Shown: in pieces, positions 3,479 through 35,300 of the stretch
Numbering within the stretch: the first letter of the stretch is position 1
Layout of the letters: every line of letters starts with the position of its first letter
Assembly: GCA_002269645.1 (NCBI GenBank)
Contig: NIVC01004766.1
Location: forward strand, 1 to 35,514
Length of the DNA stretch: 35,514 nucleotides
Source: Macrostomum lignano
Lineage: Eukaryota
Direction of reading: 5' to 3'
The notes under the pieces: generated by a model
What the model was told of the DNA's origin: nothing
Seen by the model: the letters and a program-made list of their open reading frames with translations, nothing else
The model's database searches: none
Translations under genes and position numbers: made by a program

Positions 3479-4128
3479 GAGGGGCGTCGCCACCGGGGGG
3501 GGGACAAGGAGGTTATGTCCTGCAAGTAAAAGCTATGGGGGGTGGGGGACATGCCAATGTTTTGTCCCCCACCCAACCTTCTAACCAGAAATCAATAATC
3601 AATAATTTTGCGTTAAATTGAGTGTCTGCGGCGCCACAATGAGTGTCTGCGGCGCCACAATGAGTGTCTGCGGCGCCACAATGAGTGTCAGTGGCGCTAA
3701 AATGAGTGCCTGCGGCGCCACAATGAGTGCCTGCGGCGCTAAATTGAGTGTCTGCGGCGCCACAATGAGTGCCTGCGGCGCCACAATGACAATGAGTGTC
3801 TGCGGCGCCACAATGAGTGTCTGCGGCGCCAAAATGAGTGTCTGCGGCGCCACAATGAGTGCCTCCGGCGCCAAAATGAGTGCCTGCGGCGCCACAATGA
3901 GTGCCTGCGGCGCCAAAATGAGTGCCTGCGGCGCCACAATGAGTGCCTGCGGCGCCAAAATGAGTGTCTGCGGCGCCACAATGAGTGCCTGCATCGCCAC
4001 AATGAGTGCCTGCGGCGTTAAAATCAGCGCTGACAACACCGATTCTGAAGAATGTACATTTACAATTGTACATCTAGAATTCTTGGCTTTGTCCCCCCCC
4101 CACCATAAAATCCATGGCGACGCCCCAG
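3479..4128. mobile_element. Non-autonomous DNA transposon (MITE) with 12-bp TIRs ggggcgtcgcca / tggcgacgcccc, enclosing a minisatellite
   Basis: Perfect 12-bp inverted repeats at 3481-3492 and 4115-4126, plus subterminal ggggggg-aca / tgt-ccccccc motifs at both ends. No clean TSD visible. Confidence 0.6.
3619..4020. repeat. 21-bp minisatellite (aatgagtgtctgcggcgccac), about 19 copies
   Basis: Direct tandem units. They explain the repetitive ORFs on both strands at 3513-4181. Confidence 0.95.
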
Positions 4129-4496
4129 TCTTGGTAAATTGTGTCGATTTTTTGTTTAATTTCTCATTAGCAATATCATGATTTTTTTCTATTTATTCTC
4201 GCGATTAATCGATCGATTTTTTTACTGTAAATCGGCACTCTAAACGGTAATAAAAGTATGCAACTTATTCAGTACCTCAACTATTATATGAGGCATCCTT
4301 ATAAATCAAATCCTTGTCTCGAGTTCTCTCAATGATAAATTGCCTATTTTTTTCATTTTCTCATCCTTCGCAATCGGGAGTTGGGTAATCGATCAATCAA
4401 TCAATCGATTGCACCCAAGTCGTTGGGATTAGTTTTCAAGATCTCTGCTAGCTTCGGGCACTGTGCCATTTTATGTAACTAAAGCTGTGGGATCTT

Positions 4497-4620
4497 ATAT
4501 TTTGTTTCTTTTTATCTGAGCATTGCCGTGGCAAAATTTAGCGCACACAAGTCCCGAATATTTGTGGGGCCGCGCAGGGAATCGAACCAAGAAACCCTTT
4601 GACTGCTGAGCTGCTCTGCC
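4497..4620 (-). mobile_element. Degenerate short tRNA-derived SINE fragment
   Basis: Minus strand has a degenerate A box (agctcagcagtc), a B box (ggttcgattccc) and an A-rich tail (aaaaagaaacaaaa). It does not fold as a full tRNA. Confidence 0.45.
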
Positions 4621-4674
4621 TTCCTCCAATTAAATTTTCTAAATGTCCATCACGTCGGTCGCAACTACGAGCGG

Positions 4675-5586
4675 ATCTATCAATCCATCTATCCATCTAT
4701 CTATCTATCCACCTGTCCATCTATCTATCCATCTATCCACCTGCCCATCTATCTATCCATCTATCCATCTATCTATCTATCCACCTGTCCATCTATCTAT
4801 CCATCTATCCACCTGTCCATCTATCTATCCATCAATCCACCTGTCCTTCTATCTATCCATCTGTCCATCTATCTATCTATCCATCTATCTATCTATCTAT
4901 CCATCTTTCCATCTATCTATCTATCCATCCATCTATCCATCTATCCATCTGTCCATCTATCTATCCATCTATCCACCTGTCCATCTATCCATCTGTCCAT
5001 CTATCCACCTGTCCATCTATCTATCCATCTATCCACCTGTCCATCTATCTATCCATCTATCCATCTGTCCATCTATCTATCTGTCCATCTATCTATCCAT
5101 CTATCCACCTGTCCATCTATCCATCTGTCCATCTATCCACCTGTCCATCTATCTATCCATCTATCCACCTGTCCATCTATCTATCGATCTATCCACCTGT
5201 CCATCTATCTATCCATCTATCCATCTGTCCATCTATCTATCCATCTATCCATCTGTCCATCTATCTATCCATCTGTCCATCTATCTATCCATCTATCCAT
5301 CTACCTATCTGTCCATCTATCTATCCATCTGTCCATCTATCTATCCATCTGTCCATCTATCTATCCATCTATCCACCTGTCCATCTATCCACCTGTCCAT
5401 CTACCCATCTGTCCATCTATCTATCCATCTGTCTATCTATCTATCCATCTGTCCATCTATCTATCCATCTATCCACCTGTCCATCTACCCATCTGTCCAT
5501 CTATCTATCCATCTGTCCATTTATCTATCCGTCTATCCATCTGTCCATCTATCTATCCATCTGTCCATCTATCTATCTATCTATCT
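4675..5586. repeat. Compound (CTAT/CCAT/CTGT)n tetranucleotide microsatellite (GATA/GACA family)
   Basis: Continuous tetranucleotide runs, the source of the SIHLSIY ORFs. Confidence 0.95.
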
Positions 5587-6007
5587 GCACAGCATGCTAG
5601 CTATTTTCAGATATGCAAGAACGGCTGCAGCTCATTCATCTCGTTCTTGTGATATAGGCAGTTCAGTTTTGTATTACAAAAGATTATTTATGCGATGCGA
5701 TTGACGGATTCGCTCCCGAACATCCGGGATTACTGAAAACCTGTCAAATTTTGCTTTAGCTCGTAAAACTCGCATCGATCTGAAAGGCCTTTCAGCGCCT
5801 CATGAAGCGTCAATGGCGCAGCACAGGCGCGAAGCAATCACACACTGCTGTATAGAATACTCTCTATACTCTACATGTATTTTGGCAGCCCCTGACAGTG
5901 TCCACAGAATTTGGGTTTGAAGCAAGCAATATAAACAGTGTAACAGTGCGTTAGCTATAGATCTACACGACGCCAAGCACTTGATCAGCAGGTGTAAATA
6001 AATATTT

Positions 6008-6577
6008 GCGTGTGTACACAGACAGAGAGCGCTGTGTGTACATAGACAGAGCAGGTGTGTGTACACAGACAGAACAGGTGTGTGTACACAGACAGAAGGT
6101 GTGTGTACACAGACAGAACAGTTGTGTGTACACAGACAGAACAGTTGTGTGTACACAGACAGAACAGGTGTGTGTACACAGACAGAACAGGTGTGTGTAC
6201 ACAGATAGAACAGGTGTGTGTACACAGACGGAACAGGTGTGTGTACACAGACAGAACAGGTGTGTGTACACAGACAGAACAGGTGTGTGTACACAGACAG
6301 AACAGGTGTGTGTACACAGACAGAACAGGTGTGTGTACACAGACGGAACAGGTGTGTGTACACAGACAGAACAGGTGTGTGTACACAGACAGAACAGGTG
6401 TGTGTACACAGACGGAACAGCTGCTGTGTGTACACAGATAGAACTGGTGTGTGTACACAGACAGAACAGGTGTGTATATACAGACGGAACAGGTGTATGT
6501 ACAGACAGAACAGCTGTGTGTACGCAGACAACAGGTGTGTGTACACAGACAGGACAGCTGTGTGTACACAGACAGAA
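6008..6577. repeat. 21-bp minisatellite (gtgtgtacacagacagaacag)
   Basis: About 27 tandem units, the source of the CVHRQNR/VCTQTEQ ORFs. Confidence 0.95.
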
Positions 6578-6981
6578 CCACCATCACCACAATTTGGAGT
6601 TGCATAGCGTCGCAGAGCTGCTGTCCAGCCCTGTTGCAGGCCAACTTGCACTTGCGCAGAGATATTCAGCAAAATTTCCGATTGTATTGCAACGAGCCTG
6701 CAGTAGCCAGCTGCGATATAAATATAGACAGGATTCCCGCTTCTATCATAAATTTCATGCTCCTAAATCAACAGCTGACAGTGGCAGTCTGCTTATCCAT
6801 ATTTGTCTATTTTGTATGTAATGATCATACGCGTGTACTTCTGTGAAATATTTCTTAGGATATTCTAGCTACAGTGTCCAAGTAATCAATGCAGTCTGAG
6901 TGCATGAGAATACGAAATGAGTTAAAAGAAGGATGGTTCTGGTAGACACCTAATGATCATGCTACAGTATATTCCAAATTG

Positions 6982-7792
6982 ATCTGGTAGACTCCACAGT
7001 CATCTGGTAGACTCCACAGTCATCTGGTAGATTCCACAGTTATCTGGTAGATTCCACACTTATCTGGTAGCTTCCACAGCCAGCTGGTAGATTCCACACT
7101 TATCTGGTAGCTTCCACAGCCATCTGGTAGATTCCACAACCATCTGGTAGATTTCAAAGCAATCTGGTAGATTCCACAGCCATCTGGTAGATTTCAAAGC
7201 AATCTGGTAGATTCCACAGCCATCTGGTAGATTCCACAGCCATCTGGTAGATTCCACAGTCATCTGGTAGATTCCACAACCATCTGGTAGATTTCAAAGC
7301 AATCTGGTAGATTCGACAGCCATCTGGTAGATTTCACAGCCAGCAGGTAGATTTCACAGCCATCTGGTAGATTCCACAGCCATCTGGTAAATTTCAAAGC
7401 AATCTGGTAGATTCCACAGTCATCTGGTAGATTCCACAGCCAGCAGGTAGATTCCACAACCATCTGGTAGATTTCACAGCCATTTGGTAGATTCCACAAC
7501 CATCTGGTAGATTTCAAAGCAATCTGGTAGATTCCACAGTTATCTGGTAGATTCCACAGCCAGTTGGTAGATTCCACAGTTATCTGGTAGATTCCACAAC
7601 CAGCTGGTAGATTCCACAGTTATCTGTAGATTCCTCAGTTATCTGGTAGACTCCACAATCATCTGGTAGATTCGAAAGTTATCTGGTAGATTCCAAACTC
7701 ATCTGGTAGATTCCAGTCATCTAGTAGATTCCACAGTCATCTAGTAGATTCCACAGTAGATTCATCTCGTCGACACCCCGGTGCTCTGGTAG
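6982..7792. repeat. 20-bp minisatellite (catctggtagattccacagc)
   Basis: About 39 tandem units with a recurring caatctggtagat...ttcaaag variant. Confidence 0.95.
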
Positions 7793-8465
7793 ATCGGTTT
7801 CCATTCAAAGGCATAAGTTTCCAAGAAGCAGAAAAATACCCGTCATTCCAACCCCAGAGCCATCTACGGTTTCCAAGTAGGCGAACTGCCCATCCAGCTT
7901 TAATTATCAACCAGCTTGAAAAGCTAAAGGTGCAAAAATGCAGTACAAGTATTTTTTCTATCAGCTTCGCTAAAAGCAGCACTGTAATTAAGGAATTAAT
8001 GGCGCAAGAAATGGACCCGTGTAGAAATCGCGGAAGGACAGCAACAGAAGTTGCGCAGGCAGAGCGTTTAGAAATCAAGCCATAAAAGTAAGCTGCAGGT
8101 CTGCATGCGTTCGTCGAACTGCCTGCCTGCTTCCCCCAGACAGCATGGCCGACTTTCCTGCAGACCGCAAGTTAACCGCGATCTCTTGGCTCTCTGTTAA
8201 TAAACGGAAAGTTCTGGACCACTGGCCAGGCCTATACATCTACATGATATGTATATACGTTAGGTACAGGAACAGACTACTGGTAGAAGCTGAAGAAATT
8301 TTCTAAAACGCAATAAATTCCTAATTTTACTCTCCTTAATTCCGTCCTCAAAATTTTTGGTCCGCTGGCACGAACGCACACAGGGCATCATTCGTAATTA
8401 GGTGTGACCAGGTTGTGGTGACAGCTCCTCTACAATCCACGTATATATTAACCTGCTCAAAGCTA

Positions 8466-10357
8466 CCTTCCGATCGAGACATTCCTTTGAACCTACAGAC
8501 CTTCTGATTGAGAAATCCTTTAAACCTACAGACCTTCTGATTGAGAAATCCTTTAAACCTACGGACCTTCTGATTGAGAAATCCTTTAAACCTACGGACC
8601 TTCTGATTGAGAAATCCTTTAAACCTACGGACCTTCTGATTGAGAAATCCTTTAAACCTACAGACCTTCTGATTGAGACATTCCTTTAAACCTACAGACC
8701 TTCTTTCTGATCGAGACATTCCTTTAAACCTACAGACCTTCTGATCGAGACATTCCTTTGAACCCACAGACCTTCTTTCTGATCGAGACATTCCTTTAAA
8801 CATACAGACCTTCTGATCGAGACATTCCTTTGAACCTACAGACCTTCTTTCTGATCGAGACATCCTTTAAACCTACAGAACTTCTGATCGAGACATTCCT
8901 TTGAACCTACAGACCTTCTTTCTGATCGAGACATTCCTTTAAACCTACAGAACTTCTGATCGAGACATTCCTTTGAACCTACAGACCTTCTTTCTGATCG
9001 AGACATCCTTTAAACCTACAGAACTTCTGATTGAGACATTCCTTTGAACCTACAGACCTTCTGATCGAGACATTCCTTTAAACCTACAGAACTTCTGATT
9101 GAGACATCCTTTAAACCTACGGACCTTCTGATTGAGACATTCCTTTGAACCTTGCAGACCTTCTGATCGAGACATTCCTTTAAACCTACAGAACTTCTGA
9201 TTGAGACATTCCTTTAAACCTACAGACCTTCTGATTGAGACATTCCTTTAAACCTACAGAACTTCTGATTGAGACATTCCTTTAAACCTACAGAACTTCT
9301 GATTGAGACATTCCTTTAAACCTACAGACTTCTGATTGAGACATTCCTTTAAACCTACAGAACTTCTGATTGAGACATCCTTTAAACCTACGGACCTTCT
9401 GATAGAGACATTCCTTTAAACCTACAGACCTTCTGATTGAGACATTCCTTTAAACCTACAGACCTTCTTTCTGATCGAGACATTCCTTTAAACCTACAGA
9501 CCTTCTGATCGAGACATTCCTTTGAACCTACAGACCTTCTTTCTGATCGAGACATTCCTTTAAACATACAGACCTTCTGATCGAGACATTCCTTTGAACC
9601 TACAGACATTCTTTCTGATCGAGACATTCCTTTGAACCTACAGACCTTCTTTCTGATCGAGACATCCTTTAAACCTACAGAACTTCTGATCGAGACATTC
9701 CTTTGAACCTACAGACCTTCTGATCGAGACATTCCTTTAAACCTACAGAACTTCTGATTGAGACATCCTTTAAACCTACGGACCTTCTGATAGAGACATT
9801 CCTTTAAACCTACAGACCTTCTGATTGAGACATTCCTTTAAACCTACAGAACTTCTGATCGAGACATTCCTTTGAACCTACAGACCTGATCGAGACATTC
9901 CTTTAAACCTACGACCTTCTGATTGAGACATTCCTTTAACCTTGCAGACCTTCTGATCGAGACATTCCTTTAAACCTACAGACTTCTGATTGAGACATTC
10001 CTTTAAACCTACAGACCTTCTGATTGAGACATTCCTTTAAACCTACAGACCTTCTGATTGAGACATTCCTTTAAACCTACAGAACTTCTGATTGAGACAT
10101 TCCTTTAAACCTACAGAACTTCTGATTGAGACATCCTTTAAACCTACGGACCTTCTGATAGAGACATTCCTTTAAACCTACAGACCTTCTGATTGAGACA
10201 TTCCTTTAAACCTACAGAACTTCTGATCGAGACATTCCTTTGAACCTACAGACCTGATCGAGACATTCCTTTAAACCTACAGACCTTCTGATCGAGACAT
10301 TCCTTTAAACCTACAGACCTTTCTGATCGAGACATTCCTTTGAACCTACAGAACTTC
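8466..10357. repeat. 34/39-bp minisatellite (gacattcctttaaacctacagaccttctgatcga), about 1.9 kb, with higher-order structure
   Basis: About 54 units, with 34-bp units alternating with 39-bp units that carry an extra tttct. Confidence 0.95.
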
Positions 10358-10378
10358 AGGGTATACTTCTATGCACAA

Positions 10379-10667
10379 GGGGGCTGTAGCCCAGTGGGTA
10401 AAACGTCAGACTCACGACTGAAAGGTCGGGGGTTCGATTCTGGGCTCAACTCGAAACAGTTTGTGTCCTTGAGCAAGACACTTAACTCTGCATTGCTTCA
10501 GCTTACCCAGCTGTAAAATGGGTGCCAGCATTAGCTGGGGTAATTGAGGGTGCCCAGTCCTTGGACTGAACAGCCGTACGCAGCCTTCAGATGCGCCGCG
10601 CAATAGCTGCGGCTGAGCTGTCGGTTGCACATCTGCCCATTAGGGCAGATGTATAATTAATTAATAA
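10379..10667 (+). mobile_element. tRNA-derived SINE with CORE(MIR)-like central domain and 3' stem-loop
   Basis: A box gtagcccagtgg and B box ggttcgattct. CORE-like tgtgtccttgagcaagacacttaactc...ctgtaaaatggg. Perfect 10-bp hairpin at 10629-10652, then an AT-rich tail. A second copy lies at about 30355-30665 on the minus strand. Confidence 0.85.
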
Positions 10668-15781: not shown

Positions 15782-16085
<304 letters not shown>

Positions 16086-16271: not shown

Positions 16272-18753
16272 CTAAGCAGGTTTATTGCAAAAGTTTTGAT
16301 AGCTCATTTCGGAATCGTGGGAAACAGTGATTGGCTGCAGACCATCGCATATTGAGCTGGACAGAGGCGCCAGTTCTGTGAATGCTTCTAAAGTCACGTG
16401 ACTGCCTGCCCCGCCACCGCGGCGCTGCCAGGCCACGGCGGCCACGTGACCCAGAGGCAGCCGGTGCTCCTCGAACAACCAATCAGAGCTCGCCGAACCG
16501 TCAATGTACACGATGGATCGCGAGGTCGTGAGAGGAAGGTCTGTGGCGTCGAACAGGAAGTCGGGGTCGGGCTGGCAGTTCAGGCGGGACAGGCTGAACC
16601 CGATCCCATCGCCTGTGGCCTTCACGACCGACTCTTTGAGACACTGCGGACAAGCATTAGAAACTGCAGAAATTGTCACGGGGTGCACTAATTAGAGTGT
16701 CAGGAGATGCACTAATTAGGTGTCAGGAGATGCACTAATTAGGTGTCAGGAGGTGCTCTAATTAGGGTGTCAGGAGATGCACTAATTAGGTGTCAGGAGA
16801 TGCTCTAATTAGGGTGTCAGGAGTTGCTCTAATTAGGGTGTCAGTGGTTGGCACTAATTAGGGTGTCAGGAGGTGCACTAATTAGGTGTCAGGAGATGCA
16901 CTAATTAGGTGTCAGGAGGTGCTCTAATTAGGGTGTCAGGAGATGCTCTAATTAGGGTGTAAGGGGTTGGCACTAATTAGGGTGTCAGGAGATGCACGAA
17001 CTAGGGTGTCAGAGGTGTACTTATTAGGGTGTCAGAAATTGCACTAATTATGGTGTCAGGGGCTGGCACTATTAATAAAAATAGGTGACACAAGGTTACC
17101 AATGATTTCAGGGAAGATTTCTCCCCCACAAAAGAACTCGCTACACAAGTTCTCATGGCGCATCCGCACTCACCCAGATCCTGTAGAACGCAGCCAGCTG
17201 CTGAGAGTCTCCGCCATGCGACCTGACGAAGCGCCACTCATCCTCAGTCAGCTGACGGCGCATGATGCGGAAGAACGACTCGGCAGACGATTCGCCTCCT
17301 GTTGATTTCGGATTGGAAAATATTAGATTAAAAATGCGCTTGACTTGCCTACTACGAGTAGTTGAATGAGGAGCAGAATGTGGGTTAAAGTTGCGTAGAT
17401 TGGAGATTTTAAAGACTGGGGATTTTGAAGTTTGGGATTGTGAAGCTTGGAGATTGTAAAGCTTGGAGATTTTGAAGATTGGAGATTGTGAAGTTTGGGG
17501 GATTGTGAAGCTTGGAGATTGTGAAGCTTGGAGATTGTGAAGCTTGCGGATTGTGAAGCTTGGAGATTGTGAAGCTTGGGGGATTGTGAAGCTTGCGGAT
17601 TGTGAAGCTTGGAGATTGTGAAGCTTGGGGGATTGTGAAGCTTGGAGATTTTGAAGCTTGGGGATTGTGAAGCTTGGAGATTGTGAAGCTTGGAGATTTT
17701 GAAGCTTGGGGATTGTGAAGCTTGGAGATTGTGAAGCTTGGGGGATCGTGAAGCTTGGAGATTTTGAAGCTTGGAGAATGTGAAGCTTGGAGATTTTGAA
17801 GCTTGGGTATTGTGAAGCTTGGGGATTGTGAAGCTTGGAGATTTTGAAGCTTGGGGATTGTGAAGCTTGGGAATTGTGAAGCTTGGAAATTGTGAAGCTT
17901 GGAGATTGTGAAGCTTGGGGATTGTGAAGCTTGGGCATTGTGAAGCTTGGGCATTGTGAAGCTTGGGGATTGTGAAGCTTGGATATTGTGAAGCTTGGAT
18001 ATTGTGAAGCTTGGGGATTGTGAAGCTTGGATATTGTGAAGCTTGGGCATTGTGAAGCTTGGGCATTGTGAAGCTTGGATATTGTGAAGCTTGGAGATTG
18101 TGAAGCTTGGAGATTGTGAAGCTTGGAGATTGTGAAGCTTGGGGATTGTGAAGCTTGGAGATTGTGAAGCTTGGGGGATTGTGAAGTTTGGGATTTTGAA
18201 GCTTGTCACGCACTCATAGAGCCGTTCACACAGGGTGTACAGCGTCCCTGACTTTTGAATCGTCTGGCATGTACACTTTCTCTGGCTTGTGGGCTCCAGG
18301 GGTGGCCTAAGAGTAGGACGCGTTTACCGCTCAGTCAGTTGCTCTGCCCCCCACCCCAAAATCTTTGAGATTTCTAATAAAGAATTACGCACTGGGCAGG
18401 GTGGCCTTCATCACATCGCAGCCAACACGGAGCCCTGGCCCGCAGACACCGCACAGAATGAGCACGTCGCCCTGGTGGCTGATGTTGAAGTCGGCCTCAA
18501 AGCCAGCCAGAAACGGGCGCCCCTTGTCGCTGCGCTGCAGGCAGGCGGTCAGCTGCGAATTGTCCAGCCCAGTGGCCGAGGTGCCGAAACGCCGGGCCAG
18601 CAGGCGGCTGGCGAGAGCAGCTTTGCTGTCGCGTCGGTGCAGGAACTGCTCGACATGCCGACGCTCCTCGGCCGACACACAGCTGAGGCAGAGGCGCCAA
18701 TCGTCTTTGCTTGGCAGCCAGGCCGACGTGCGAAAAAGCCAGCGGATTGTTGG
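16272..18753 (-). CDS. AASDHPPT: L-aminoadipate-semialdehyde dehydrogenase-phosphopantetheinyl transferase (Sfp-type PPTase); 3 exons found, start codon absent from these exons
   Basis: Exons 18753-18393 (phase 1), 17298-17174 and 16643-16272, all GT-AG and in frame. Motifs: RWLF..WLPS..DW, EERRHVEQF...DSKAAL, KGRP, FNISHQGD, VGCDVM, FFRIMRRQLT..EW, FYRIWCLKESVVKATGDGIGFSL, W.FEE. AATAAA on the minus strand at 16210-16205. Confidence 0.93.
16678..17072. repeat. 23-24 bp minisatellite (gggtgtcaggagatgcactaatta) in an AASDHPPT intron
   Basis: About 16 tandem units. Confidence 0.95.
17398..18204. repeat. 16-17 bp minisatellite (ttggagattgtgaagc) in an AASDHPPT intron
   Basis: About 50 units, most containing aagctt. 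Source of the PSFTIPKLHN ORFs. Confidence 0.95.
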
Positions 18754-20760
18754 CTAAAGTGCATACAATGTACTTTGATTTTTAATATTATTGTAATATA
18801 AAAAAATAAAATATGAACAAAAATTTTAGCAAAATTATGCTTATTACATTTCTAATAGCATTGAACTACAAGCAGTAGGCTACTTAGAGTCTTCAATTAC
18901 TTGGGCTATATGCTTCTAGTTTATTGCAAGTTTCAAACTTATGTTATAGGCTAAATAACAATTCTTACTTAAAAAGCATATTTTAATTTTGTTATCTATC
19001 TAGTAAGTTACTCATTGCAATAGCAATAAATTTGATAAAATATTTTATAACATTTTAAATAGCTAGGAATGTCAAACATTTAGGAAGATATATGTCAAAC
19101 ATTTAGAAAGATATAAATAGTACTTTAATATTCTTATGAAAATTCAAAAGATTCTTGCTTACTAAGTTGTTTATTAGTGTCAGTACCAATGACCTAACTT
19201 TTCAATACATGTATATATAGGGCCTACTCATATAAAGCTAGGTAAATAGTTTTTTATTAGAATAAAAATGGAAAATAAGATATGACTTTATATCTTTAGT
19301 ATTATTTTAGGATCTATTTTCAAATCTCCAAAAATGGGTACATCCTTTTGTATGACAAAATTAAATAAGCAATTGATATTGATTTAAAAAATTATATTCT
19401 ATTTAGAAACATTTACCATTAATTATAATAAGGGCCCCATATTAATTTGATATTTTTTAGAATATAAAAAAGAAGAATAACAGCAACAGTGAACAGATAA
19501 ATATAGATTTAAAATATTGATAAATAATGAACTTATTATCAATAATACAGCTAGAAAGTGTATATATACTATATAGGATGACTTATCTCAAGTAATTTAA
19601 GTTACTATTCTATTTTAGGAAAGATATAAAAGAAAGAAGGCTAATTAGATTTACCTTTCTAATTAATAAAAGGTTTATAACTGTTTATCAATATTTATTT
19701 CCTTGCATACATTTATTTGTTTGCTTTTTGGCCAAAACTAGTCTTTGAGACACAAACACTTATCTATGTCTATGTCTATGGATGCTCACAAATTTGGCAA
19801 CAGAAATTCACCATGGACAATATCGGCAAAAGCAAATCCAGCAACAATCTAGGCAAATTCAGCGAAAAGTCTTTTTCTATAATTATAGCTAAATACTAAA
19901 AATGGTCTGTCGGTATCTAACTATCTTTATAGCTAAAGTTAAAGAAAATTATATGTAATAAGGTTTTTTAAAATGCTCGTGAAAGTTCCATTCTTCCCGA
20001 AATTTGGCTTTGCATTTCTGTCCACTTCCTTAAAGCCATTGGCACTGTAAAGATACTCTTTTGCACTTAAATAATTGCAAATAGATTATTATAGCTTAAA
20101 ATGACAAAAGTACTTTAATAGAAATAAATTCCAAAGCTTAAACGCTGATACAAACAATGCAAATAATTATGAAAAATTTATGAAGTGCTTGATATAAGCA
20201 GTAGTAAACAAGCGATGCAAACATCATCATAAAAACATGGCACATGCACATGGCAGTTACCACATTAGCTGTGAAAGTTGTAAAAGTGAATAGATATTGC
20301 TGTAGAATTATGTATGCCCAATAAGATTAGAGTCAAATTAATTATAGTTCATCAGTGCGCACAGTCCGTTGATGACAACTCTGCATAGTCAACTTAATAT
20401 GGTTGTTTGTTTGGTTTGGCTTAGCTAGCCAATGTATACATTCGAGGAAAGCATGGCTTTTAAATTTTAGCAAACAAAGCGAAAAAACAAAGAAATCAGC
20501 AAAGAAAAACATTCACATATAAACAAAGCAAAACAGCAGAACAGTTACTATTAGAACTTGATCTTTCATTGGCACAAAATCAACTTAAATAGCTTGTGAG
20601 TTATGATTTCCTACGGTACTACTATTCGAAACTCAAAATGTTCAGCTAAGAATGAAACATTATTCATCCTGATTCTTCTACTTCTGGTACTATAGTAGCA
20701 ACATGTAAAATAAATTTTAATGATATACATACAGAAGTGAAAGAATAATATAAGAATTGA

Positions 20761-21014
20761 TCGAAAAGGCACAAGCTCTAACCCTAACCCTAAATCCTAA
20801 CCCTAAGGCCCCAACCCTAACCCTAACCTATAAGCCTAAACCCTAACCCTAACCTATAAGCCTAAACCCTAACCTTATGAGGCACAAGCCCTAACTCTAA
20901 CCCTTTTCGACTCGAAGGGTTAGAGGTCGAGCTTATGACTTTTCGAGCTTGTCATTAAGCCTAAATCACAGGCTTCTAAATCAGTTTTCGACGATGCGAC
21001 TTTTCGAGCTTGTA
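20761..21014. repeat. Interstitial telomere-like (CCCTAA)n tract bracketed by 18-bp inverted repeats; probable non-autonomous element
   Basis: Degenerate ccctaa run at about 20777-20905. IR pair tcgaaaaggcacaagctc (20761-20778) and gagcttatgacttttcga (20929-20946), 16/18 match. Confidence 0.7.
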
Positions 21015-21064: not shown

Positions 21065-22337
21065 CAGGTGTTTGTGAGCTCGTTTAGCGATTGTTGAATC
21101 AGCATTCAGCGCCGGGTTGACAACTTGACGTATTTCCATCGCAACTGGAGCGAGTACATATGTACGCGGCCGGATTCGGAGAAGGGCAGATGAAAACCAC
21201 TGCTGGCTGGTTGTGTACTAGCTTGCATGATGCATGTAAAAGTTTTTAAACATATAGTTCGTTAATTATGTTGGTCTCAGGATGTAGTCAATAAGTAATT
21301 TTATACATTATTGCAGGTAGGCTTAATCTGATGCAGTGTTAGTGTAACAAACACATTTCTGATGTGACATGTATATTATCCGTTACTTGTCCAATTGCTG
21401 GTGGGACAAGTTAACTCAGAATGAACTAACACTTGAAGCTAAATTTACGATTTATCGTAGCTAACGTAGCAACAGGCGGACAGTGAAAGTTTTTTAACGG
21501 TCGTGAAAGTTGTTAAAGAAGTACATGTAAACCGAGGCGATCGGGCGGGCCTAAATTATCGATTGTTCAACTATCATACGAAACGTTGGGGGGCCAACAC
21601 ACGCAAACAATACATAAAGAGATTAGGAAATTATTCGATTATTGTTGGTTATGCCTAACTCTGACACCTTTCAAGAGCTATTTTTTTACGACTTATACGT
21701 CTGGGGCGGTGAAATCCTTGTCTGGACTAAATAAATTTAGTTCTTGGTGGATTGCGCTACTAATATATAGTTATTGCTATATTACAGTAGCTACTGGTTT
21801 TCTGAACCCTCGAAGTTTTAAAGATCGTCAACAATCTAAAATACAGAATTACATGTACGATGGTTCGTTGATGTACAGGACAAATGACCTAAATCGATTT
21901 TTGCAGGCCTGCGCACCATGCACTCTCTCACCTCATGGCTGTTTGGTCGAGCTCTTCGCATTCGAATGCGGCTGTGGAACGGTACGGAGTACCGAGTTGA
22001 CTACTCCAGCTTCTCTGTTGCCAGCGAGGCTGATAAGTTTCGGCTGAACATATCTGGATTTCACACCAGCGACCCGACTGTGGGAGACAGCATGGCAATG
22101 AGCAATGGGATGACGTTACGTTCGATTCGGATAACGACGCGTATGCTGGCGGCAGTTGCAGTGTTCAATACAAAGGGTTGTTGGTGGTACCAAGCTTGCC
22201 ATGCGACAAATCCAAACGGACTGTACTTTAATCCACCCGCCGCACTCAACGTGGCAGATTATGCTGTGGGAATTGTATGGCAATATAACTTTGGATTTTA
22301 TTATTCACTGATAGAATTTGAAATGCTGATTCAGTGA
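21065..22337 (+). pseudogene. Fibrinogen-related domain (FReD; ficolin/angiopoietin/tenascin-like) gene with multiple lesions
   Basis: Exon A (about 21065-21210) reads QVFVSSFSDC*ISIQRRVDNLTYFHRNWSEY/AAGFGEG/DENHCWL, with an in-frame TGA at 21095-21097 and indels. Exon B (21907-22337, acceptor ttgcag) reads GLRTMHSLT...YSSFSVASEADKFRLNISGF...GDSM...NGMT/TFDSDND...C/GCWWYQACHATNPNG...VW. These are typical fibrinogen C-terminal domain motifs. Confidence 0.88.
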
Positions 22338-23694: not shown

Positions 23695-26600
23695 TTAAGC
23701 GGTAGCCGACGCGGTGACATTTCTCACCGCCCAAGGTGGCAGTTCACGGAGTCCGAAGATGGCCGGAGCGTAGCTAATCGTTGCCACGGCAACCAAGGAG
23801 TTGCTAAGCAGCCACATGACGACGCCGGTTCTCAACTAGAATATAGAATTGTTTAATTTTCTTGAAATTGAAACACAGTTAACAACCCCTATTGGTCTCT
23901 GAATCAAAGTCTTGTACATTTGTAGGTCATTTAGCACGACAACTGCAGAGACAGTTTCGGTAATAACAACTTATTAATACACCGTGACTAGCTAGATGGG
24001 ACTTGTTGTCCTTTGTTGCTTCACTGATTACGTTTTCTTTGCTGCAGTACGAGGTGTTTAAGTAATTTGGCCATATTGTCATTGTAGGCAATAGCTAGCT
24101 AGGCTTACCATATCCACGGCCCTCAGGTAGCCCCTGGAGAACACCAGAATATTTGCCGGCGTAGAAATCGGCAGAATGAAGGCGAATGAGCACGAAGCGG
24201 TGGACGAAAGCATCAGGTAGAACGGGTGCACGCCGATGTTTTGGCTCTGCAATTAAGCGAGCATATACAGATATTTACACAGACAAGCTTACATGCATGT
24301 AGGGTTAGGATTTCGGCGCCATATTCCATATTCTAGGACACCTGTTCACTATTGAACTCATACTACAACCGATAAGTACATGTGCGGATGTACACAATGT
24401 ACTTACAAAGCTGGCCAAGATAGGCAGCAATATAGTTGCGGCCGTGCCGTTTGAAGTCCACTCCGTCAGCAGAGCGGAGAACAGGCAGAAGATGAAGATC
24501 AGAGCCTCCAAAGGTACAACTTTCAGGTGCAACAGTTGCTGACCAATCCAGTCTGACAAACCCGACACCTGTGAATGAATATATCAAGTCAGTAAGAAAG
24601 AAACTCAGGTGATGAGTTATATTATTATTAGCAAGGATGTCTGATGATGAACGCAAGGACCACTAGAAGTTACCGTTAACGGTAACTTCTAGTGGTCCTT
24701 GGATGAACGTCACTGAATACTACAGCACTTGTGCTGCAGAAACCAACCAACCCTTGAAGTGTCAGCCAGAGCGAATCCAGCGCCCAGCATGAGCACAATG
24801 TTCCAGGCTACTCGTTCCTGCATCAACCGCCAGGTCATCATCCTGTCCGGTCGGTCGTCAATCTGCACAATCAGGTTCGGCTCAACCGTGACTTCGCGGG
24901 AATAGGTGCGTCTCCGTCTACGACTGGACGATTTGCCACAGCGCTGTGGGCACTTGCAGGTGCAGCAGCTAAAGGGATTCTTGGACGGCAGGAAGAAGAG
25001 AAGTATGGCCGATAGGATGACTGGCTGAGCGTCGCTAGTGAAGGACATGGTGTTGCTCGTGTTTTTAGGGTCCGGGCCGAGGAAAAGGGCCGACCAGCCG
25101 CGAACTCCGGGCTCCCGGCTGATCCAGAGACAGATGGTAAGCACAAAGAGCAGAATGACGTTCACTTCAGCGTACCTGTCACGAGGTTTATAGTTCGACA
25201 TGAGGTTATTGGGGTTCACTACCAGATCGAATTAAGCATCGACTTGATGATACTTTACTCACGAGATAGGCCCGAGTTTCTGATACTCCCTGCGCAGTGT
25301 CGCCTTGATTCGCTCCTCGTCACTTTTTGGCAAGGTGTTCGGTCGCACAAAGCTCCTGGATGAGTGTTTGAAGAGTTGTAGCTAGTTAGTCCATGGGGCA
25401 TGAACAAGTACGTACCGATATTTATGATTGTGAAGTATAGACAGAGCGACGTGGTTTTATTGTTTTACAGGACTAAAAGTGCGCATGTCAGGGCTGCTGT
25501 AAATCATGTGCAAGTGTGGGCTTTGCCACACAGGGTTACCCCTGCATACTCTCGCATGACTGACTAATCAATGCTCAATCATTGCTAGCTAAAGCAGAAT
25601 AAACACGAACCTGAACCCCAAAAAGCTGATCTGCAGCCAAACCCAAGCGATGAGCAGAGTTACAACGGCCAGCGGCAGACCATAGAACAACCAGCTGCTG
25701 TAGTTTAGCGACGTCTCCGAGCCGAAGTATTCGGCCACGATGCCGTTCAAGATTACGTTAGGAGCCGTGCCGGTCAGGGTGGCGACCCCGCCGAACACGG
25801 CGCCGTAGGACACGGAGAGCATCAGCATGCGGCAGATGTTGGCAAACTCGGCGTTGCGCTTGTCGGCAATGAACTCTTTCATGGGCACGCGCATGTCGAC
25901 GTCGTGCGCCGAATCAATCTCCGCATCCACGTGCCGATCTTCGGCAACGATTTCGTCGTCGTCCAACTCTTTAGCTGTCTGTCCCTCGACGTCGCTCTCT
26001 GGTGCGAAGTCTTTGTCGCCACAGCCAGCATCGTGATTGCCGATTCCAGACGCGACCGTTGTCTGGTCGCTGCTCGACGAAGCGGCCGACATTTCGAAGG
26101 CGGGATTCACTGCGCCAGTCTCCACGGCACCCCCCTCGAAATCTCGGCGCCCCTCTGACATTTTGGCTGCCGTTTCAACGTCTAAAGCGTTGCTATGACG
26201 GCGCTGGTGAGAGTGCCTGGAATGCGCGGCTTGGTAGTGCTTGCGCAGCTCCACCAGCACGGCCTCCGCTATGGGGAGCATCATGGCCACCGTGGCGGTG
26301 TTGGAGATCCACATCGACAGAATCCAAGTGGGAATGAGGAAGCCAAACAGAAGCCTGCCAGTGAGTTTTGGGCATCATCAATTTGAGTTGGAGATTTGAC
26401 AAATATGAGAACAGCCTGAGTATTTTGAAAGTCGGCGTAACTGATATTTAATGTCGCTAAATTTGACCGAAAACTTGCACCATTGTTATATACGAGTATA
26501 TACTGTACTTTGATTCTTTGAAAGTCAAAATCCTTCGCTGGGCGTTACATCAGAAAGTCAAACGTAAAAAACACCTGCTCAAACATTAAGGATTTGATAT

Positions 26601-34238: not shown

Positions 34239-34810
34239 TCATGTTGTCAAGTCTGCTCTGCACTCCATAAAGTTATGGCAGGATACCCAATATTGTTTCG
34301 AACTTCCAAGCTCAAAGGCGGCACGGCTCGTCTTCAGATTTTTATTGTTCAACAAGCCGCAGCAGCAGCCCCTCGGCAGTTCAAGCAGTTAACAGACTGC
34401 CTGATCTCCTGATTTTGCTTCAAGGGATTTTTATTGCTGCAGCGACAAATTCTGCCAAGGCGAGTGCGGGGAAGGCCGTGTGGAGTTGGAAGCGAAATCG
34501 CGACCCCGAGGAGCAGAGCAGCTGTTGGTTTTAACTTTGCTTCCAGCCAGCTAAAGCAGAAGCTTGGCTGCATCCTGGTAAAGGCCAGGGAGTGCTGCAA
34601 GTTCGTGTTATTGCGTCTTTACGGCATTCCTGGTGGCGCCTTCAATCATGCCTGCCTTTCAATAAGTCTGCGTAGGCAGCCTGCTTTGGGTGCCCGCTGG
34701 GTTTGATTCAACAAATTTTGGAGGGAGTTCGCAGATTGAAAGTTGAAAGTCGTCGTGAAACAGCAACAACTTTTGTGGACTGCTGCGACTCTTTTGTACA
34801 GAGGATAAGA

Positions 34811-35300
34811 TAGGGAGAGAGGGAGAGGGGGAGGCGAGAGAGAGAGGGAGAGGGGGAGGCGAGAGGAGAGAGAGGAGAGAGGGAGGCGAGAGGGAGAGAG
34901 GGAGGGGGAGGCGAGAGGGAGAGAGGGAGAGGGGGAGGCGAGAGGGAGAGAGGGAGAGGGGGAGGCGAGAGGGAGAGAGGAGAGGGAGGCGAGAGGGAGA
35001 GAGGGAGAGAGGGAGGCGAGAGGGAAGAGGGAGAGGGGGAGGCGAGAGGGAGAGAGGGAAAGGAAGAAGAAGGAGAGAGAGGGAGGAGAGAGAGAGAGGA
35101 GGGCACCTCCAATCTCAGGCCTGACACGGTAGAAAGGACTGACAAAAGTCAATTTAGTTGGATTGCCGATAATTCGAATCAGATAAATTCTTCGTCAGGG
35201 CTAAAAAGAGAGAGGGGGGGAGAAAGGGAGAGAGGGAGAGAGGGAGAAGGAGAGAGGAGAAAGAGAGGGGGGGAAGGGAGAAAGAAAGAGAGAGCGAGCG
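34811..35300. repeat. Polypurine (GA/GGA)-rich low-complexity tracts (34811-35103 and 35207-35300)
   Basis: gagagggagaggggggaggc units, the source of the PSLPLAS ORFs on the minus strand. Confidence 0.92.

What the first reader, a model, noticed from the sequence alone, without database searches (positions are those of the whole stretch)
18730..18830. AASDHPPT lacks its own start codon: candidate for an initiator AUG supplied by spliced-leader trans-splicing
Seen: on the minus strand a U-rich tract ends in ...tgcactttag|CCA ACA ATC CGC TGG (acceptor AG at 18755-18754, exon from 18753). The in-frame codon before it is TAG, and the only in-frame ATG in this 120-codon exon is near its end (DVMK). 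Homology starts at the fourth codon (RWLF), about where orthologs begin. About 2 kb of very AT-rich DNA lies upstream with no recognisable coding exon. Known: flatworm spliced leaders end in a conserved 3'-terminal AUG that can act as initiator Met (shown in Schistosoma), and Macrostomum trans-splices. Inference: SL-AUG plus this phase-0 exon gives MPTIRWLF..., a 286-aa enzyme whose translation would depend obligatorily on trans-splicing.
Basis: partly seen in the sequence, partly recalled or inferred. Interest (0 to 1): 0.75.

Follow-up and report, generated by a model that had tools for sequence, protein, structure and literature searches.

The report
Flatworm enzyme gene without start codon
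The Macrostomum lignano gene for the enzyme AASDHPPT has no usable start codon of its own and most likely borrows the AUG at the end of the trans-spliced leader, a trick already documented in other flatworms, so this is a tidy new example and not a new mechanism.

Summary
On the minus strand, an AG at 18755-18754 is followed by an open frame, CCA ACA ATC CGC TGG. The in-frame codon before it is TAG. The first in-frame ATG is codon 115.

The window is a whole Macrostomum lignano scaffold. The gene has three exons and is a clear AASDHPPT ortholog (285 genomic codons).

Adding one Met gives MPTIRWLF. That puts the conserved Trp at residue 6, the commonest position among 82 homologs.

The two other genomic copies fetched show the same acceptor and the same lack of an ATG. 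One of them has a 1-nt deletion that is probably an assembly error. GenBank annotates all three copies as 5'-partial, with coding starts 2-18 nt after the AG.

The published M. lignano spliced leader ends in ATG, and 30-39% of its genes are trans-spliced. Use of the leader AUG as initiator was shown in Schistosoma in 2006.

No read-level evidence could be reached, so trans-splicing at this acceptor is inferred, not shown. One chance-level upstream exon candidate (21961-21932) remains as a rival.

Verdict: leader-supplied start is the best explanation (about 0.75). It is a new member of a known kind, of modest interest.

The parts
18754..18755 (-). Candidate trans-splice acceptor AG. It forms the last two bases of the in-frame TAG at 18756-18754.
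   Evidence: Identical in L001 and L002. It matches the Y-T-N-x-A-G part of the published motif but has T instead of C at position -3.
18393..18753 (-). AASDHPPT exon 1, 361 nt in phase 0 from its first base. It encodes PTIRWLF...DVMKATLP plus the first base of an Arg codon. It holds the AASDHPPT_N domain and the start of the ACPS domain, including the catalytic Asp in GCDVMK.
   Evidence: Donor is CCCA|gtgcgt.
18762..18764 (-). The nearest upstream ATG. It is out of frame, 11 nt before the exon start, and opens an unrelated 71-codon ORF.
   Evidence: The 11 nt between this ATG and the exon start are identical in all three genomic copies.
17174..17298 (-). AASDHPPT exon 2, 125 nt (acceptor caacag|GA, donor TGG|gtgagt).
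16272..16643 (-). AASDHPPT exon 3, 372 nt including the stop TAG at 16274-16272. It holds the WCLKESVVKATG catalytic motif.
   Evidence: The GenBank coding sequence ends at 16272.
17397..18205 (.). Tandem array with a 16/48-nt period filling most of intron 1. It is not coding.
21932..21961 (-). The only upstream ATG-started open frame on the minus strand that ends in phase at a consensus GT[AG]AG donor (MRRARPNSHE|gtgaga). This is the formal candidate for a cis-spliced first exon, the rival explanation.
   Evidence: It lies antisense within a fibrinogen-like ORF and is kept in L001 with one amino-acid change. About one such site is expected by chance, a rough estimate that was not computed.

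Best explanation
The pre-mRNA of M. lignano AASDHPPT, the animal 4'-phosphopantetheinyl transferase, is trans-spliced at the AG at 18755-18754. The 35-nt spliced leader (SL), CGGTCTCTTACTGCGAAGACTCAATTTATTGCATG, is joined directly to CCAACAATC... Its terminal AUG then becomes codon 1 of a 286-aa protein, MPTIRWLF...NKPA. The gene has lost, or never had, a genomic start codon, so a full-length two-domain enzyme can only be made from the trans-spliced mRNA.

Shown here: the sequence, frame and phase; the gene identity; the fit of the N-terminus to orthologs; the same arrangement in the other copies; and the 5'-partial annotation.

Taken from the literature: the SL sequence, and the precedent for SL-AUG initiation.

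Inferred: that the SL is joined at this AG, and that ribosomes start at its AUG.
For: 1. Exon 1 is open from its first base. The preceding in-frame codon is TAG, and the first in-frame ATG is codon 115.
2. Starting at codon 115 would remove the whole AASDHPPT_N domain and the Asp of GCDVMK, which aligns with the Asp of GIDIMK in human AASDHPPT.
3. Homology to human AASDHPPT starts at residue 3.
4. In 82 homologs whose Trp aligns with the M. lignano Trp, the commonest Trp position is residue 6, as in MGSVRWAF and MSRIRWVF. SL-AUG plus PTIRW gives exactly that, so only the Met is missing.
5. The acceptor, the frame and the lack of an ATG are identical in a second, diverged copy (L001). They are also present in L002, apart from one 1-nt homopolymer deletion of the kind that makes up most of the L001/L002 differences outside the tandem arrays.
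6. The RNA-seq-based GenBank annotation calls all three copies 5'-partial, with coding starts 2, 15 and 18 nt after the AG. The transcript models therefore contain neither the upstream TAG nor any upstream exon (pipeline described).
7. The M. lignano SL ends in ATG. Between 30% and 39% of genes are trans-spliced, and these are enriched for genes conserved with human.
8. Precedent: the SL AUG is in frame in 28% of trans-spliced S. mansoni mRNAs and is required by more than 40 cDNAs (citing Cheng et al. 2006).
9. No exon-like GC island on the minus strand was found in the 4.9 kb upstream. The GC islands checked belong to a plus-strand fibrinogen-like pseudogene or to a telomere-like repeat.
Against: - No transcript or read joining the SL to this exon could be examined.
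- The acceptor is TAG, not the preferred CAG.
- The annotated 5' ends are ragged (2, 15 and 18 nt after the AG) and do not all sit on the acceptor. The annotation therefore shows that no upstream exon was modelled, but not that an SL cut was recorded here.
- One copy (L002) has a 1-nt deletion at codon 4 that would break the SL-AUG frame if it is real.
- The SL AUG has a weak context, with U at -3. This is read from the SL sequence and is my inference.
- The three copies differ at too few sites to test selection on the coding sequence: 2 synonymous and 1 non-synonymous difference.
Confidence: 0.75

Rival explanations
1. A cis-spliced upstream first exon, missed by the annotation, supplies the ATG and perhaps a few codons, and joins the same phase-0 acceptor. 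The concrete candidate is 21961-21932 (MRRARPNSHE|gtgaga). It would give MRRARPNSHEPTIRWLF across a 3.2-kb intron.
For: The acceptor would look the same for a cis-spliced internal exon. One ATG-started, in-phase consensus donor exists upstream and is retained in L001. Some orthologs carry N-terminal extensions of 10-50 residues.
Against: None of the three RNA-seq-based gene models includes an upstream exon. Only 5 GT[AG]AG motifs occur on this strand in 4.9 kb, and one in-phase candidate is about what chance gives (the chance estimate is rough and was not computed). The candidate lies antisense inside a fibrinogen-like ORF and shows an amino-acid change between copies. The modal ortholog N-terminus needs no extra residues.
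Confidence: 0.12
2. Translation starts within the genomic exon, without the SL. It would begin either at a near-cognate codon (ATC at codon 3, ACG at codon 9, CTG at codon 13) or at the internal ATG of codon 115. The latter gives the 171-aa protein predicted in UniRef.
For: In-frame near-cognate codons exist. Two UniRef models start at MKATLPRG.
Against: A start at codon 115 deletes the AASDHPPT_N domain and the catalytic Asp. A CTG or ACG start deletes the near-invariant R-W...W-P motif. An unspliced leader would also carry the out-of-frame ATG at 18764, which opens a 71-codon overlapping ORF.
Confidence: 0.05
3. Assembly artefact. A 1-nt deletion error in the 11 nt between the ATG at 18764 and the exon start hides an in-frame genomic start. 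For example, AGCC read as AGCCC would give MHFSPTIRWLF.
For: The assembly is built from long reads. Copy L002 shows about ten single-base homopolymer deletions in 4.2 kb relative to L001, one of them at codon 4.
Against: The 11-nt stretch is identical in all three separately assembled copies, including the more diverged window copy. The same error would have to occur three times. The gene models also start downstream of this ATG.
Confidence: 0.03
4. The locus is a non-functional duplicate that has lost its start, and a functional copy lies elsewhere in the genome.
For: M. lignano is a hidden polyploid with many duplicated genes. Divergence between copies is too low to show purifying selection.
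Against: All three copies found have intact splice sites, an uninterrupted 285-codon frame and conserved catalytic residues. The protein searches found no other M. lignano AASDHPPT with its own ATG.
Confidence: 0.04

Closest known systems
SL-AUG-initiated mRNAs of Schistosoma mansoni and other flatworms (Cheng, Cohen, Ndegwa & Davis 2006, J Biol Chem 281:733; called 'slORFs' in PMC9851317)
   Same: A flatworm spliced leader that ends in AUG. An acceptor in phase 0 with the main ORF. No genomic start codon that would give the full-length protein. The leader is expected to supply the initiator Met.
   Different: The species (a free-living macrostomorph) and the gene differ. Here neither the trans-splicing event nor initiation at the SL AUG has been shown. 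In Schistosoma both cDNA evidence and translation assays exist, according to the papers that cite that work.
Human AASDHPPT (PDB 2BYD, 2C43, 2CG5), a group II Sfp-type phosphopantetheinyl transferase
   Same: The same two-domain architecture (PF22624 plus PF01648), E 1e-45, aligned over residues 3-241. FNISHQGD, G-x-D-[IV]-MK and W-x-LKE-[SA]-x-x-KA are conserved.
   Different: The human gene has its own ATG, with a 13-residue extension before M14-EGVRW. The M. lignano gene has none.
Downstream genes of SL-resolved operons in M. lignano (Ustyantsev & Berezikov 2021)
   Same: A same-strand gene, an SLC13 Na/sulfate symporter, lies upstream, and AASDHPPT begins at a candidate trans-splice acceptor.
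   Different: The gap is 4.9 kb, against the published repeat-adjusted threshold of 1 kb. It also holds an opposite-strand fibrinogen-like pseudogene. Operon membership is therefore not supported.

Membership tests
Flatworm mRNAs that take their initiator Met from the SL 3'-terminal AUG | The organism has a spliced leader that ends in AUG. | not tested
   Not tested on sequence here; taken from the literature. The M. lignano SL is CGGTCTCTTACTGCGAAGACTCAATTTATTGCATG (PMC8629364), and PMC10468722 calls its final ATG a translation start codon. The window itself holds no SL RNA gene.
Flatworm mRNAs that take their initiator Met from the SL 3'-terminal AUG | The mRNA is trans-spliced at the acceptor in question. 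| not testable with these tools
   No reads or transcripts were reachable. The only indirect support is that the three 5'-partial gene models start 2-18 nt after the AG.
Flatworm mRNAs that take their initiator Met from the SL 3'-terminal AUG | The SL AUG is in frame with the main ORF, with no intervening stop. | tested here: met
   The exon is in phase 0 from 18753, so ATG plus CCA ACA ATC CGC TGG reads MPTIRW.
Flatworm mRNAs that take their initiator Met from the SL 3'-terminal AUG | No genomic in-frame AUG can give the full-length conserved protein. | tested here: met
   The in-frame codon just before the exon is TAG. The first in-frame ATG is codon 115, which lies after the N-terminal domain and the catalytic Asp.
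Flatworm mRNAs that take their initiator Met from the SL 3'-terminal AUG | Translation actually initiates at the SL AUG. | not testable with these tools
   This needs ribosome profiling, N-terminal proteomics or a reporter assay.
AASDHPPT / Sfp-type (group II) phosphopantetheinyl transferases | Two-domain architecture: AASDHPPT_N plus ACPS. | tested here: met
   PF22624 at E 3.5e-21 (residues 11-102) and PF01648 at E 3.7e-17 (residues 109-218).
AASDHPPT / Sfp-type (group II) phosphopantetheinyl transferases | Conserved catalytic and Mg-binding motifs, and closest solved relative. | tested here: met
   The best solved-structure hits are human AASDHPPT (E 1e-45), followed by Sfp (E 6e-9). D107, E160 and K164 are invariant in a 25-sequence alignment.
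Downstream gene of an SL-resolved operon | A same-strand upstream gene within about 1 kb, after subtracting repeats. | tested here: inconclusive
   The upstream SLC13 coding sequence ends at 23695, 4.9 kb away. The gap contains a plus-strand fibrinogen-like pseudogene and a telomere-like repeat. No repeat-adjusted distance was computed.

The most novel reading that the evidence does not exclude
In the Macrostomum lineage the ancestral start codon of the animal phosphopantetheinyl transferase has been lost exactly at codon 1 and replaced by the spliced leader's AUG, in every genomic copy. Synthesis of this housekeeping enzyme would then depend completely on trans-splicing. If so, this locus, in a flatworm that can be made transgenic, is a ready natural test case for measuring SL-AUG initiation in vivo. 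It also suggests that many of the '5'-partial' proteins in the M. lignano annotation may be complete proteins whose Met was trimmed away with the SL.
Probability: 0.7. Interest if true: 0.35.

Novelty: new member of a known kind. Interest (0 to 1): 0.3.

Why it matters
If confirmed, this adds a conserved housekeeping enzyme in a free-living, transgenesis-capable flatworm to the list of genes that need the spliced-leader AUG.

It would explain why GenBank labels all three copies 'partial' and why UniRef carries a truncated 171-aa model. The practical annotation fix is to keep the SL's ATG when calling ORFs in Macrostomum.

It does not reveal a new mechanism.

Tried and rejected
- **Published identifiers.** I searched for the gene identifiers (Mlig013812, Mlig031350, Mlig020684) and for AASDHPPT in paper texts and in the held supplements of Wudarski 2017 and Grudniewska 2018. 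Nothing was found. The Ustyantsev 2021 supplements are not held.
- **Exact protein look-up.** I looked up the 286-aa (with Met) and 285-aa proteins, in both allelic forms, among 15 billion proteins. They are absent, so no public transcript-derived model with the Met is on record.
- **Close relatives.** No congeneric Macrostomum orthologs or Logan transcript fragments of this gene appeared in either protein database. A profile search returned mainly vertebrates and other phyla, with no flatworm among the named top 120 hits. I therefore could not test whether related species share the ATG-less acceptor.
- **SL RNA gene.** The window holds no SL RNA gene and no Rfam family hit.
- **Key papers.** Cheng 2006 and Wasik 2015 are not held and could not be read directly. 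Their content is cited second-hand.
- **Selection test.** The copies differ at only 3 coding sites, too few for a test.
- **Segment comparison.** It used exon limits that were off by a few bases. One search supersedes it.
- **P0008.** This 667-aa model is a chimeric gene prediction and carries no information on the 5' end.
Full report
**What the window is.** The protein encoded around the finding matches GenBank PAA46631.1, 'hypothetical protein BOX15_Mlig013812g1, partial [Macrostomum lignano]'. That protein sits on a 35,514-bp contig, NIVC01004766.1 of assembly GCA_002269645.1, which is the window itself.

Two further copies exist in the same assembly:
- PAA47131.1 on NIVC01004563.1 (locus L001).
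- PAA50958.1 on NIVC01003527.1 (locus L002).

**Checking the observation.** On the minus strand the sequence reads gtacattgtatgcactttag|CCAACAATCCGCTGGCTTTTTCGC.
- The AG is at 18755-18754, and the in-frame triplet 18756-18754 is TAG.
- The frame is then open for 120 codons, to a donor CCCA|gtgcgt.
- The ATG at 18764-18762 is 11 nt upstream, so it is out of frame. It opens an unrelated 71-codon ORF.
- The full model has exons 18753-18393, 17298-17174 and 16643-16272. That is 858 nt and 285 codons, with canonical CAG acceptors and GTGAGT/GTGCGT donors at the two introns.
- In-frame ATGs occur only at codons 115, 133 and 275.
- Upstream DNA is 19-36% GC for about 2 kb, against 63-69% in exon 1.

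The long U-rich tract sits 40-70 nt upstream and does not abut the AG. The acceptor is TAG, not the CAG of the published trans-splice motif.

**What the gene is.**
- Pfam finds AASDHPPT_N (E 3.5e-21) and ACPS (E 3.7e-17).
- The best solved relatives are human AASDHPPT (E 1e-45, aligned from query residue 3), followed by Sfp.
- The motifs FNISHQGD, GCDVMK and WCLKESVVKATG are conserved. Asp107, Glu160 and Lys164 are invariant in a 25-sequence alignment.
- A profile search returns named AASDHPPT orthologs from across animals.

This is the M. lignano ortholog of the animal phosphopantetheinyl transferase.

**Is anything missing at the N-terminus besides a Met?** I collected 118 homologs that start with Met and are of normal length, and aligned their N-termini.
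- In 82 of them a Trp aligns with the Trp of PTIRW.
- The commonest position of that Trp is residue 6 (13 sequences, for example MGSVRWAF, MASVRWAF, MSRIRWVF). The range is 4 to 52.
- SL-AUG plus PTIRW gives MPTIRW, the modal form.
- Two transcript-like contigs of more distant orthologs read ATG-GAG-GGC-AGC-GTA-CGG-TGG and ATG-TAT-CGA-TGG.

So the genomic exon starts at what is codon 2 in many orthologs. A start at codon 115 would remove the N-terminal domain and the catalytic Asp. The 171-aa UniRef models are therefore not credible enzymes.

**Other genomic copies.**
- The 300 nt upstream of the acceptor, the acceptor itself and exon 1 are almost identical in the window, L001 and L002.
- L002 has ATCGC where the others have ATCCGC, which would shift the frame at codon 4.
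- Outside the tandem arrays, L001 and L002 differ almost only by single-base homopolymer deletions in L002, about ten in 4.2 kb. This one is most likely a long-read consensus error.
- The window and L001 differ at 3 coding sites, 2 synonymous and 1 non-synonymous. That is too few to test selection.

**What the public annotation implies.** The Mlig_3_7 annotation was built from RNA-seq. Spliced-leader (SL) sequences were trimmed from reads and transcripts, and ORFs were called with TransDecoder.
- All three AASDHPPT copies are labelled 'partial'. Their coding regions start 18 nt (window, at 18735), 15 nt (L001) and 2 nt (L002) after the AG.
- A 5'-partial ORF call means the transcript model does not contain the in-frame TAG just upstream. 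It also contains no upstream exon.
- The ragged ends mean I cannot tell whether the pipeline recorded an SL site here.

**The leader.** The published M. lignano SL is CGGTCTCTTACTGCGAAGACTCAATTTATTGCATG.
- Between 30% and 39% of genes are trans-spliced, and these are enriched for genes conserved with human.
- The Macrostomum genome paper of 2023 calls the SL's final ATG a 'translation start codon'.
- In flatworms generally the SL ends in AUG. In S. mansoni that AUG is in frame in 28% of trans-spliced mRNAs and is needed by more than 40 cDNAs (all citing Cheng et al. 2006, which I could not read directly).

**Looking for a rival first exon.** The same-strand upstream gene, an SLC13 Na/sulfate symporter, ends at 23695, which is 4.9 kb away. 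The GC-richer islands checked in that gap are explained in two ways:
- A plus-strand fibrinogen C-domain fragment (Pfam E 9e-19) with a frameshifted upstream piece.
- A telomere-like repeat.

On the minus strand there are only five GT[AG]AG motifs. Exactly one ATG-started open frame ends in phase at one of them: 21961-21932, MRRARPNSHE|gtgaga. It is retained in L001 with an Asn-to-Asp change. By a rough estimate that was not computed, that is about what chance would give, and no gene model uses it. It is still the specific alternative to test.

**What could not be done.** No reads, transcripts or congeneric genomes were reachable. The window holds no SL RNA gene and no Rfam family.

**Conclusion.** The most likely mechanism is trans-splicing of the SL at 18755-18754, with the SL's AUG serving as initiator to give a 286-aa enzyme, MPTIRWLF... 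(confidence about 0.75).

The rivals, with my estimates, are:
- An unannotated cis-spliced first exon (0.12).
- Non-AUG or internal initiation (0.05).
- A silent duplicate (0.04).
- An assembly indel that hides the ATG at 18764 (0.03).

The mechanism is already known in flatworms and is anticipated for Macrostomum. This is therefore a new member of a known kind, with practical value mainly for annotation and as a possible in vivo test case.

Noticed in passing
window 21918-22337 (+), with a further piece near 21125-21250 (+): An unannotated fibrinogen C-terminal domain fragment (Pfam PF00147, E 9e-19). The piece upstream of it (FHRNWSEY / AAGFGEGQ) is split across two frames, so this looks like a decayed or mis-assembled fibrinogen-related gene. 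It lies on the opposite strand, between SLC13 and AASDHPPT.
   Followed up: partly
window 20778-20874: An interstitial telomere-like repeat, (CCCTAA)n, about 15 imperfect copies, in the region upstream of AASDHPPT.
   Followed up: no
window 17397-18205, 16674-17060 and 15784-16068: Both AASDHPPT introns are largely filled by tandem arrays: a 16/48-nt unit in about 50 copies, and a 24/47-nt unit in about 16 copies. An (AGAC)71 microsatellite lies just downstream of the gene. In L001 a 119-aa 'gene' is called in the corresponding downstream stretch and may simply be a repeat-derived ORF; I did not look at its sequence.
   Followed up: partly
L002 971-985 and the whole of L002 versus L001: Outside tandem arrays, scaffolds NIVC01003527.1 and NIVC01004563.1 differ almost only by single-base homopolymer deletions in the former. 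One of them, at codon 4 of AASDHPPT, changes the annotated N-terminus to NNRWLF. This is probably consensus error in the long-read assembly.
   Followed up: yes
UniRef A0A1I8JFX7 and A0A1I8J641 (P0006, P0007) and P0008: Public protein models of this gene are either truncated to 171 aa, starting at the internal Met of DVMK, or fused into a 667-aa chimera. All appear to follow from the missing genomic start codon.
   Followed up: partly
window 3500-10400 and 34600-35200: Much of the rest of the scaffold consists of long tandem arrays that produce long spurious repeat ORFs (for example LSIYLSIH and VCVHTPVLSVYTH repeats). The comparison with L001 and L002 shows variable copy number around 8465-10357.
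   Followed up: no
window 16283-16288 (-): An AATAAA hexamer lies a few bases before the AASDHPPT stop codon, and another lies about 60 nt after it. This suggests a very short 3' UTR.
   Followed up: no
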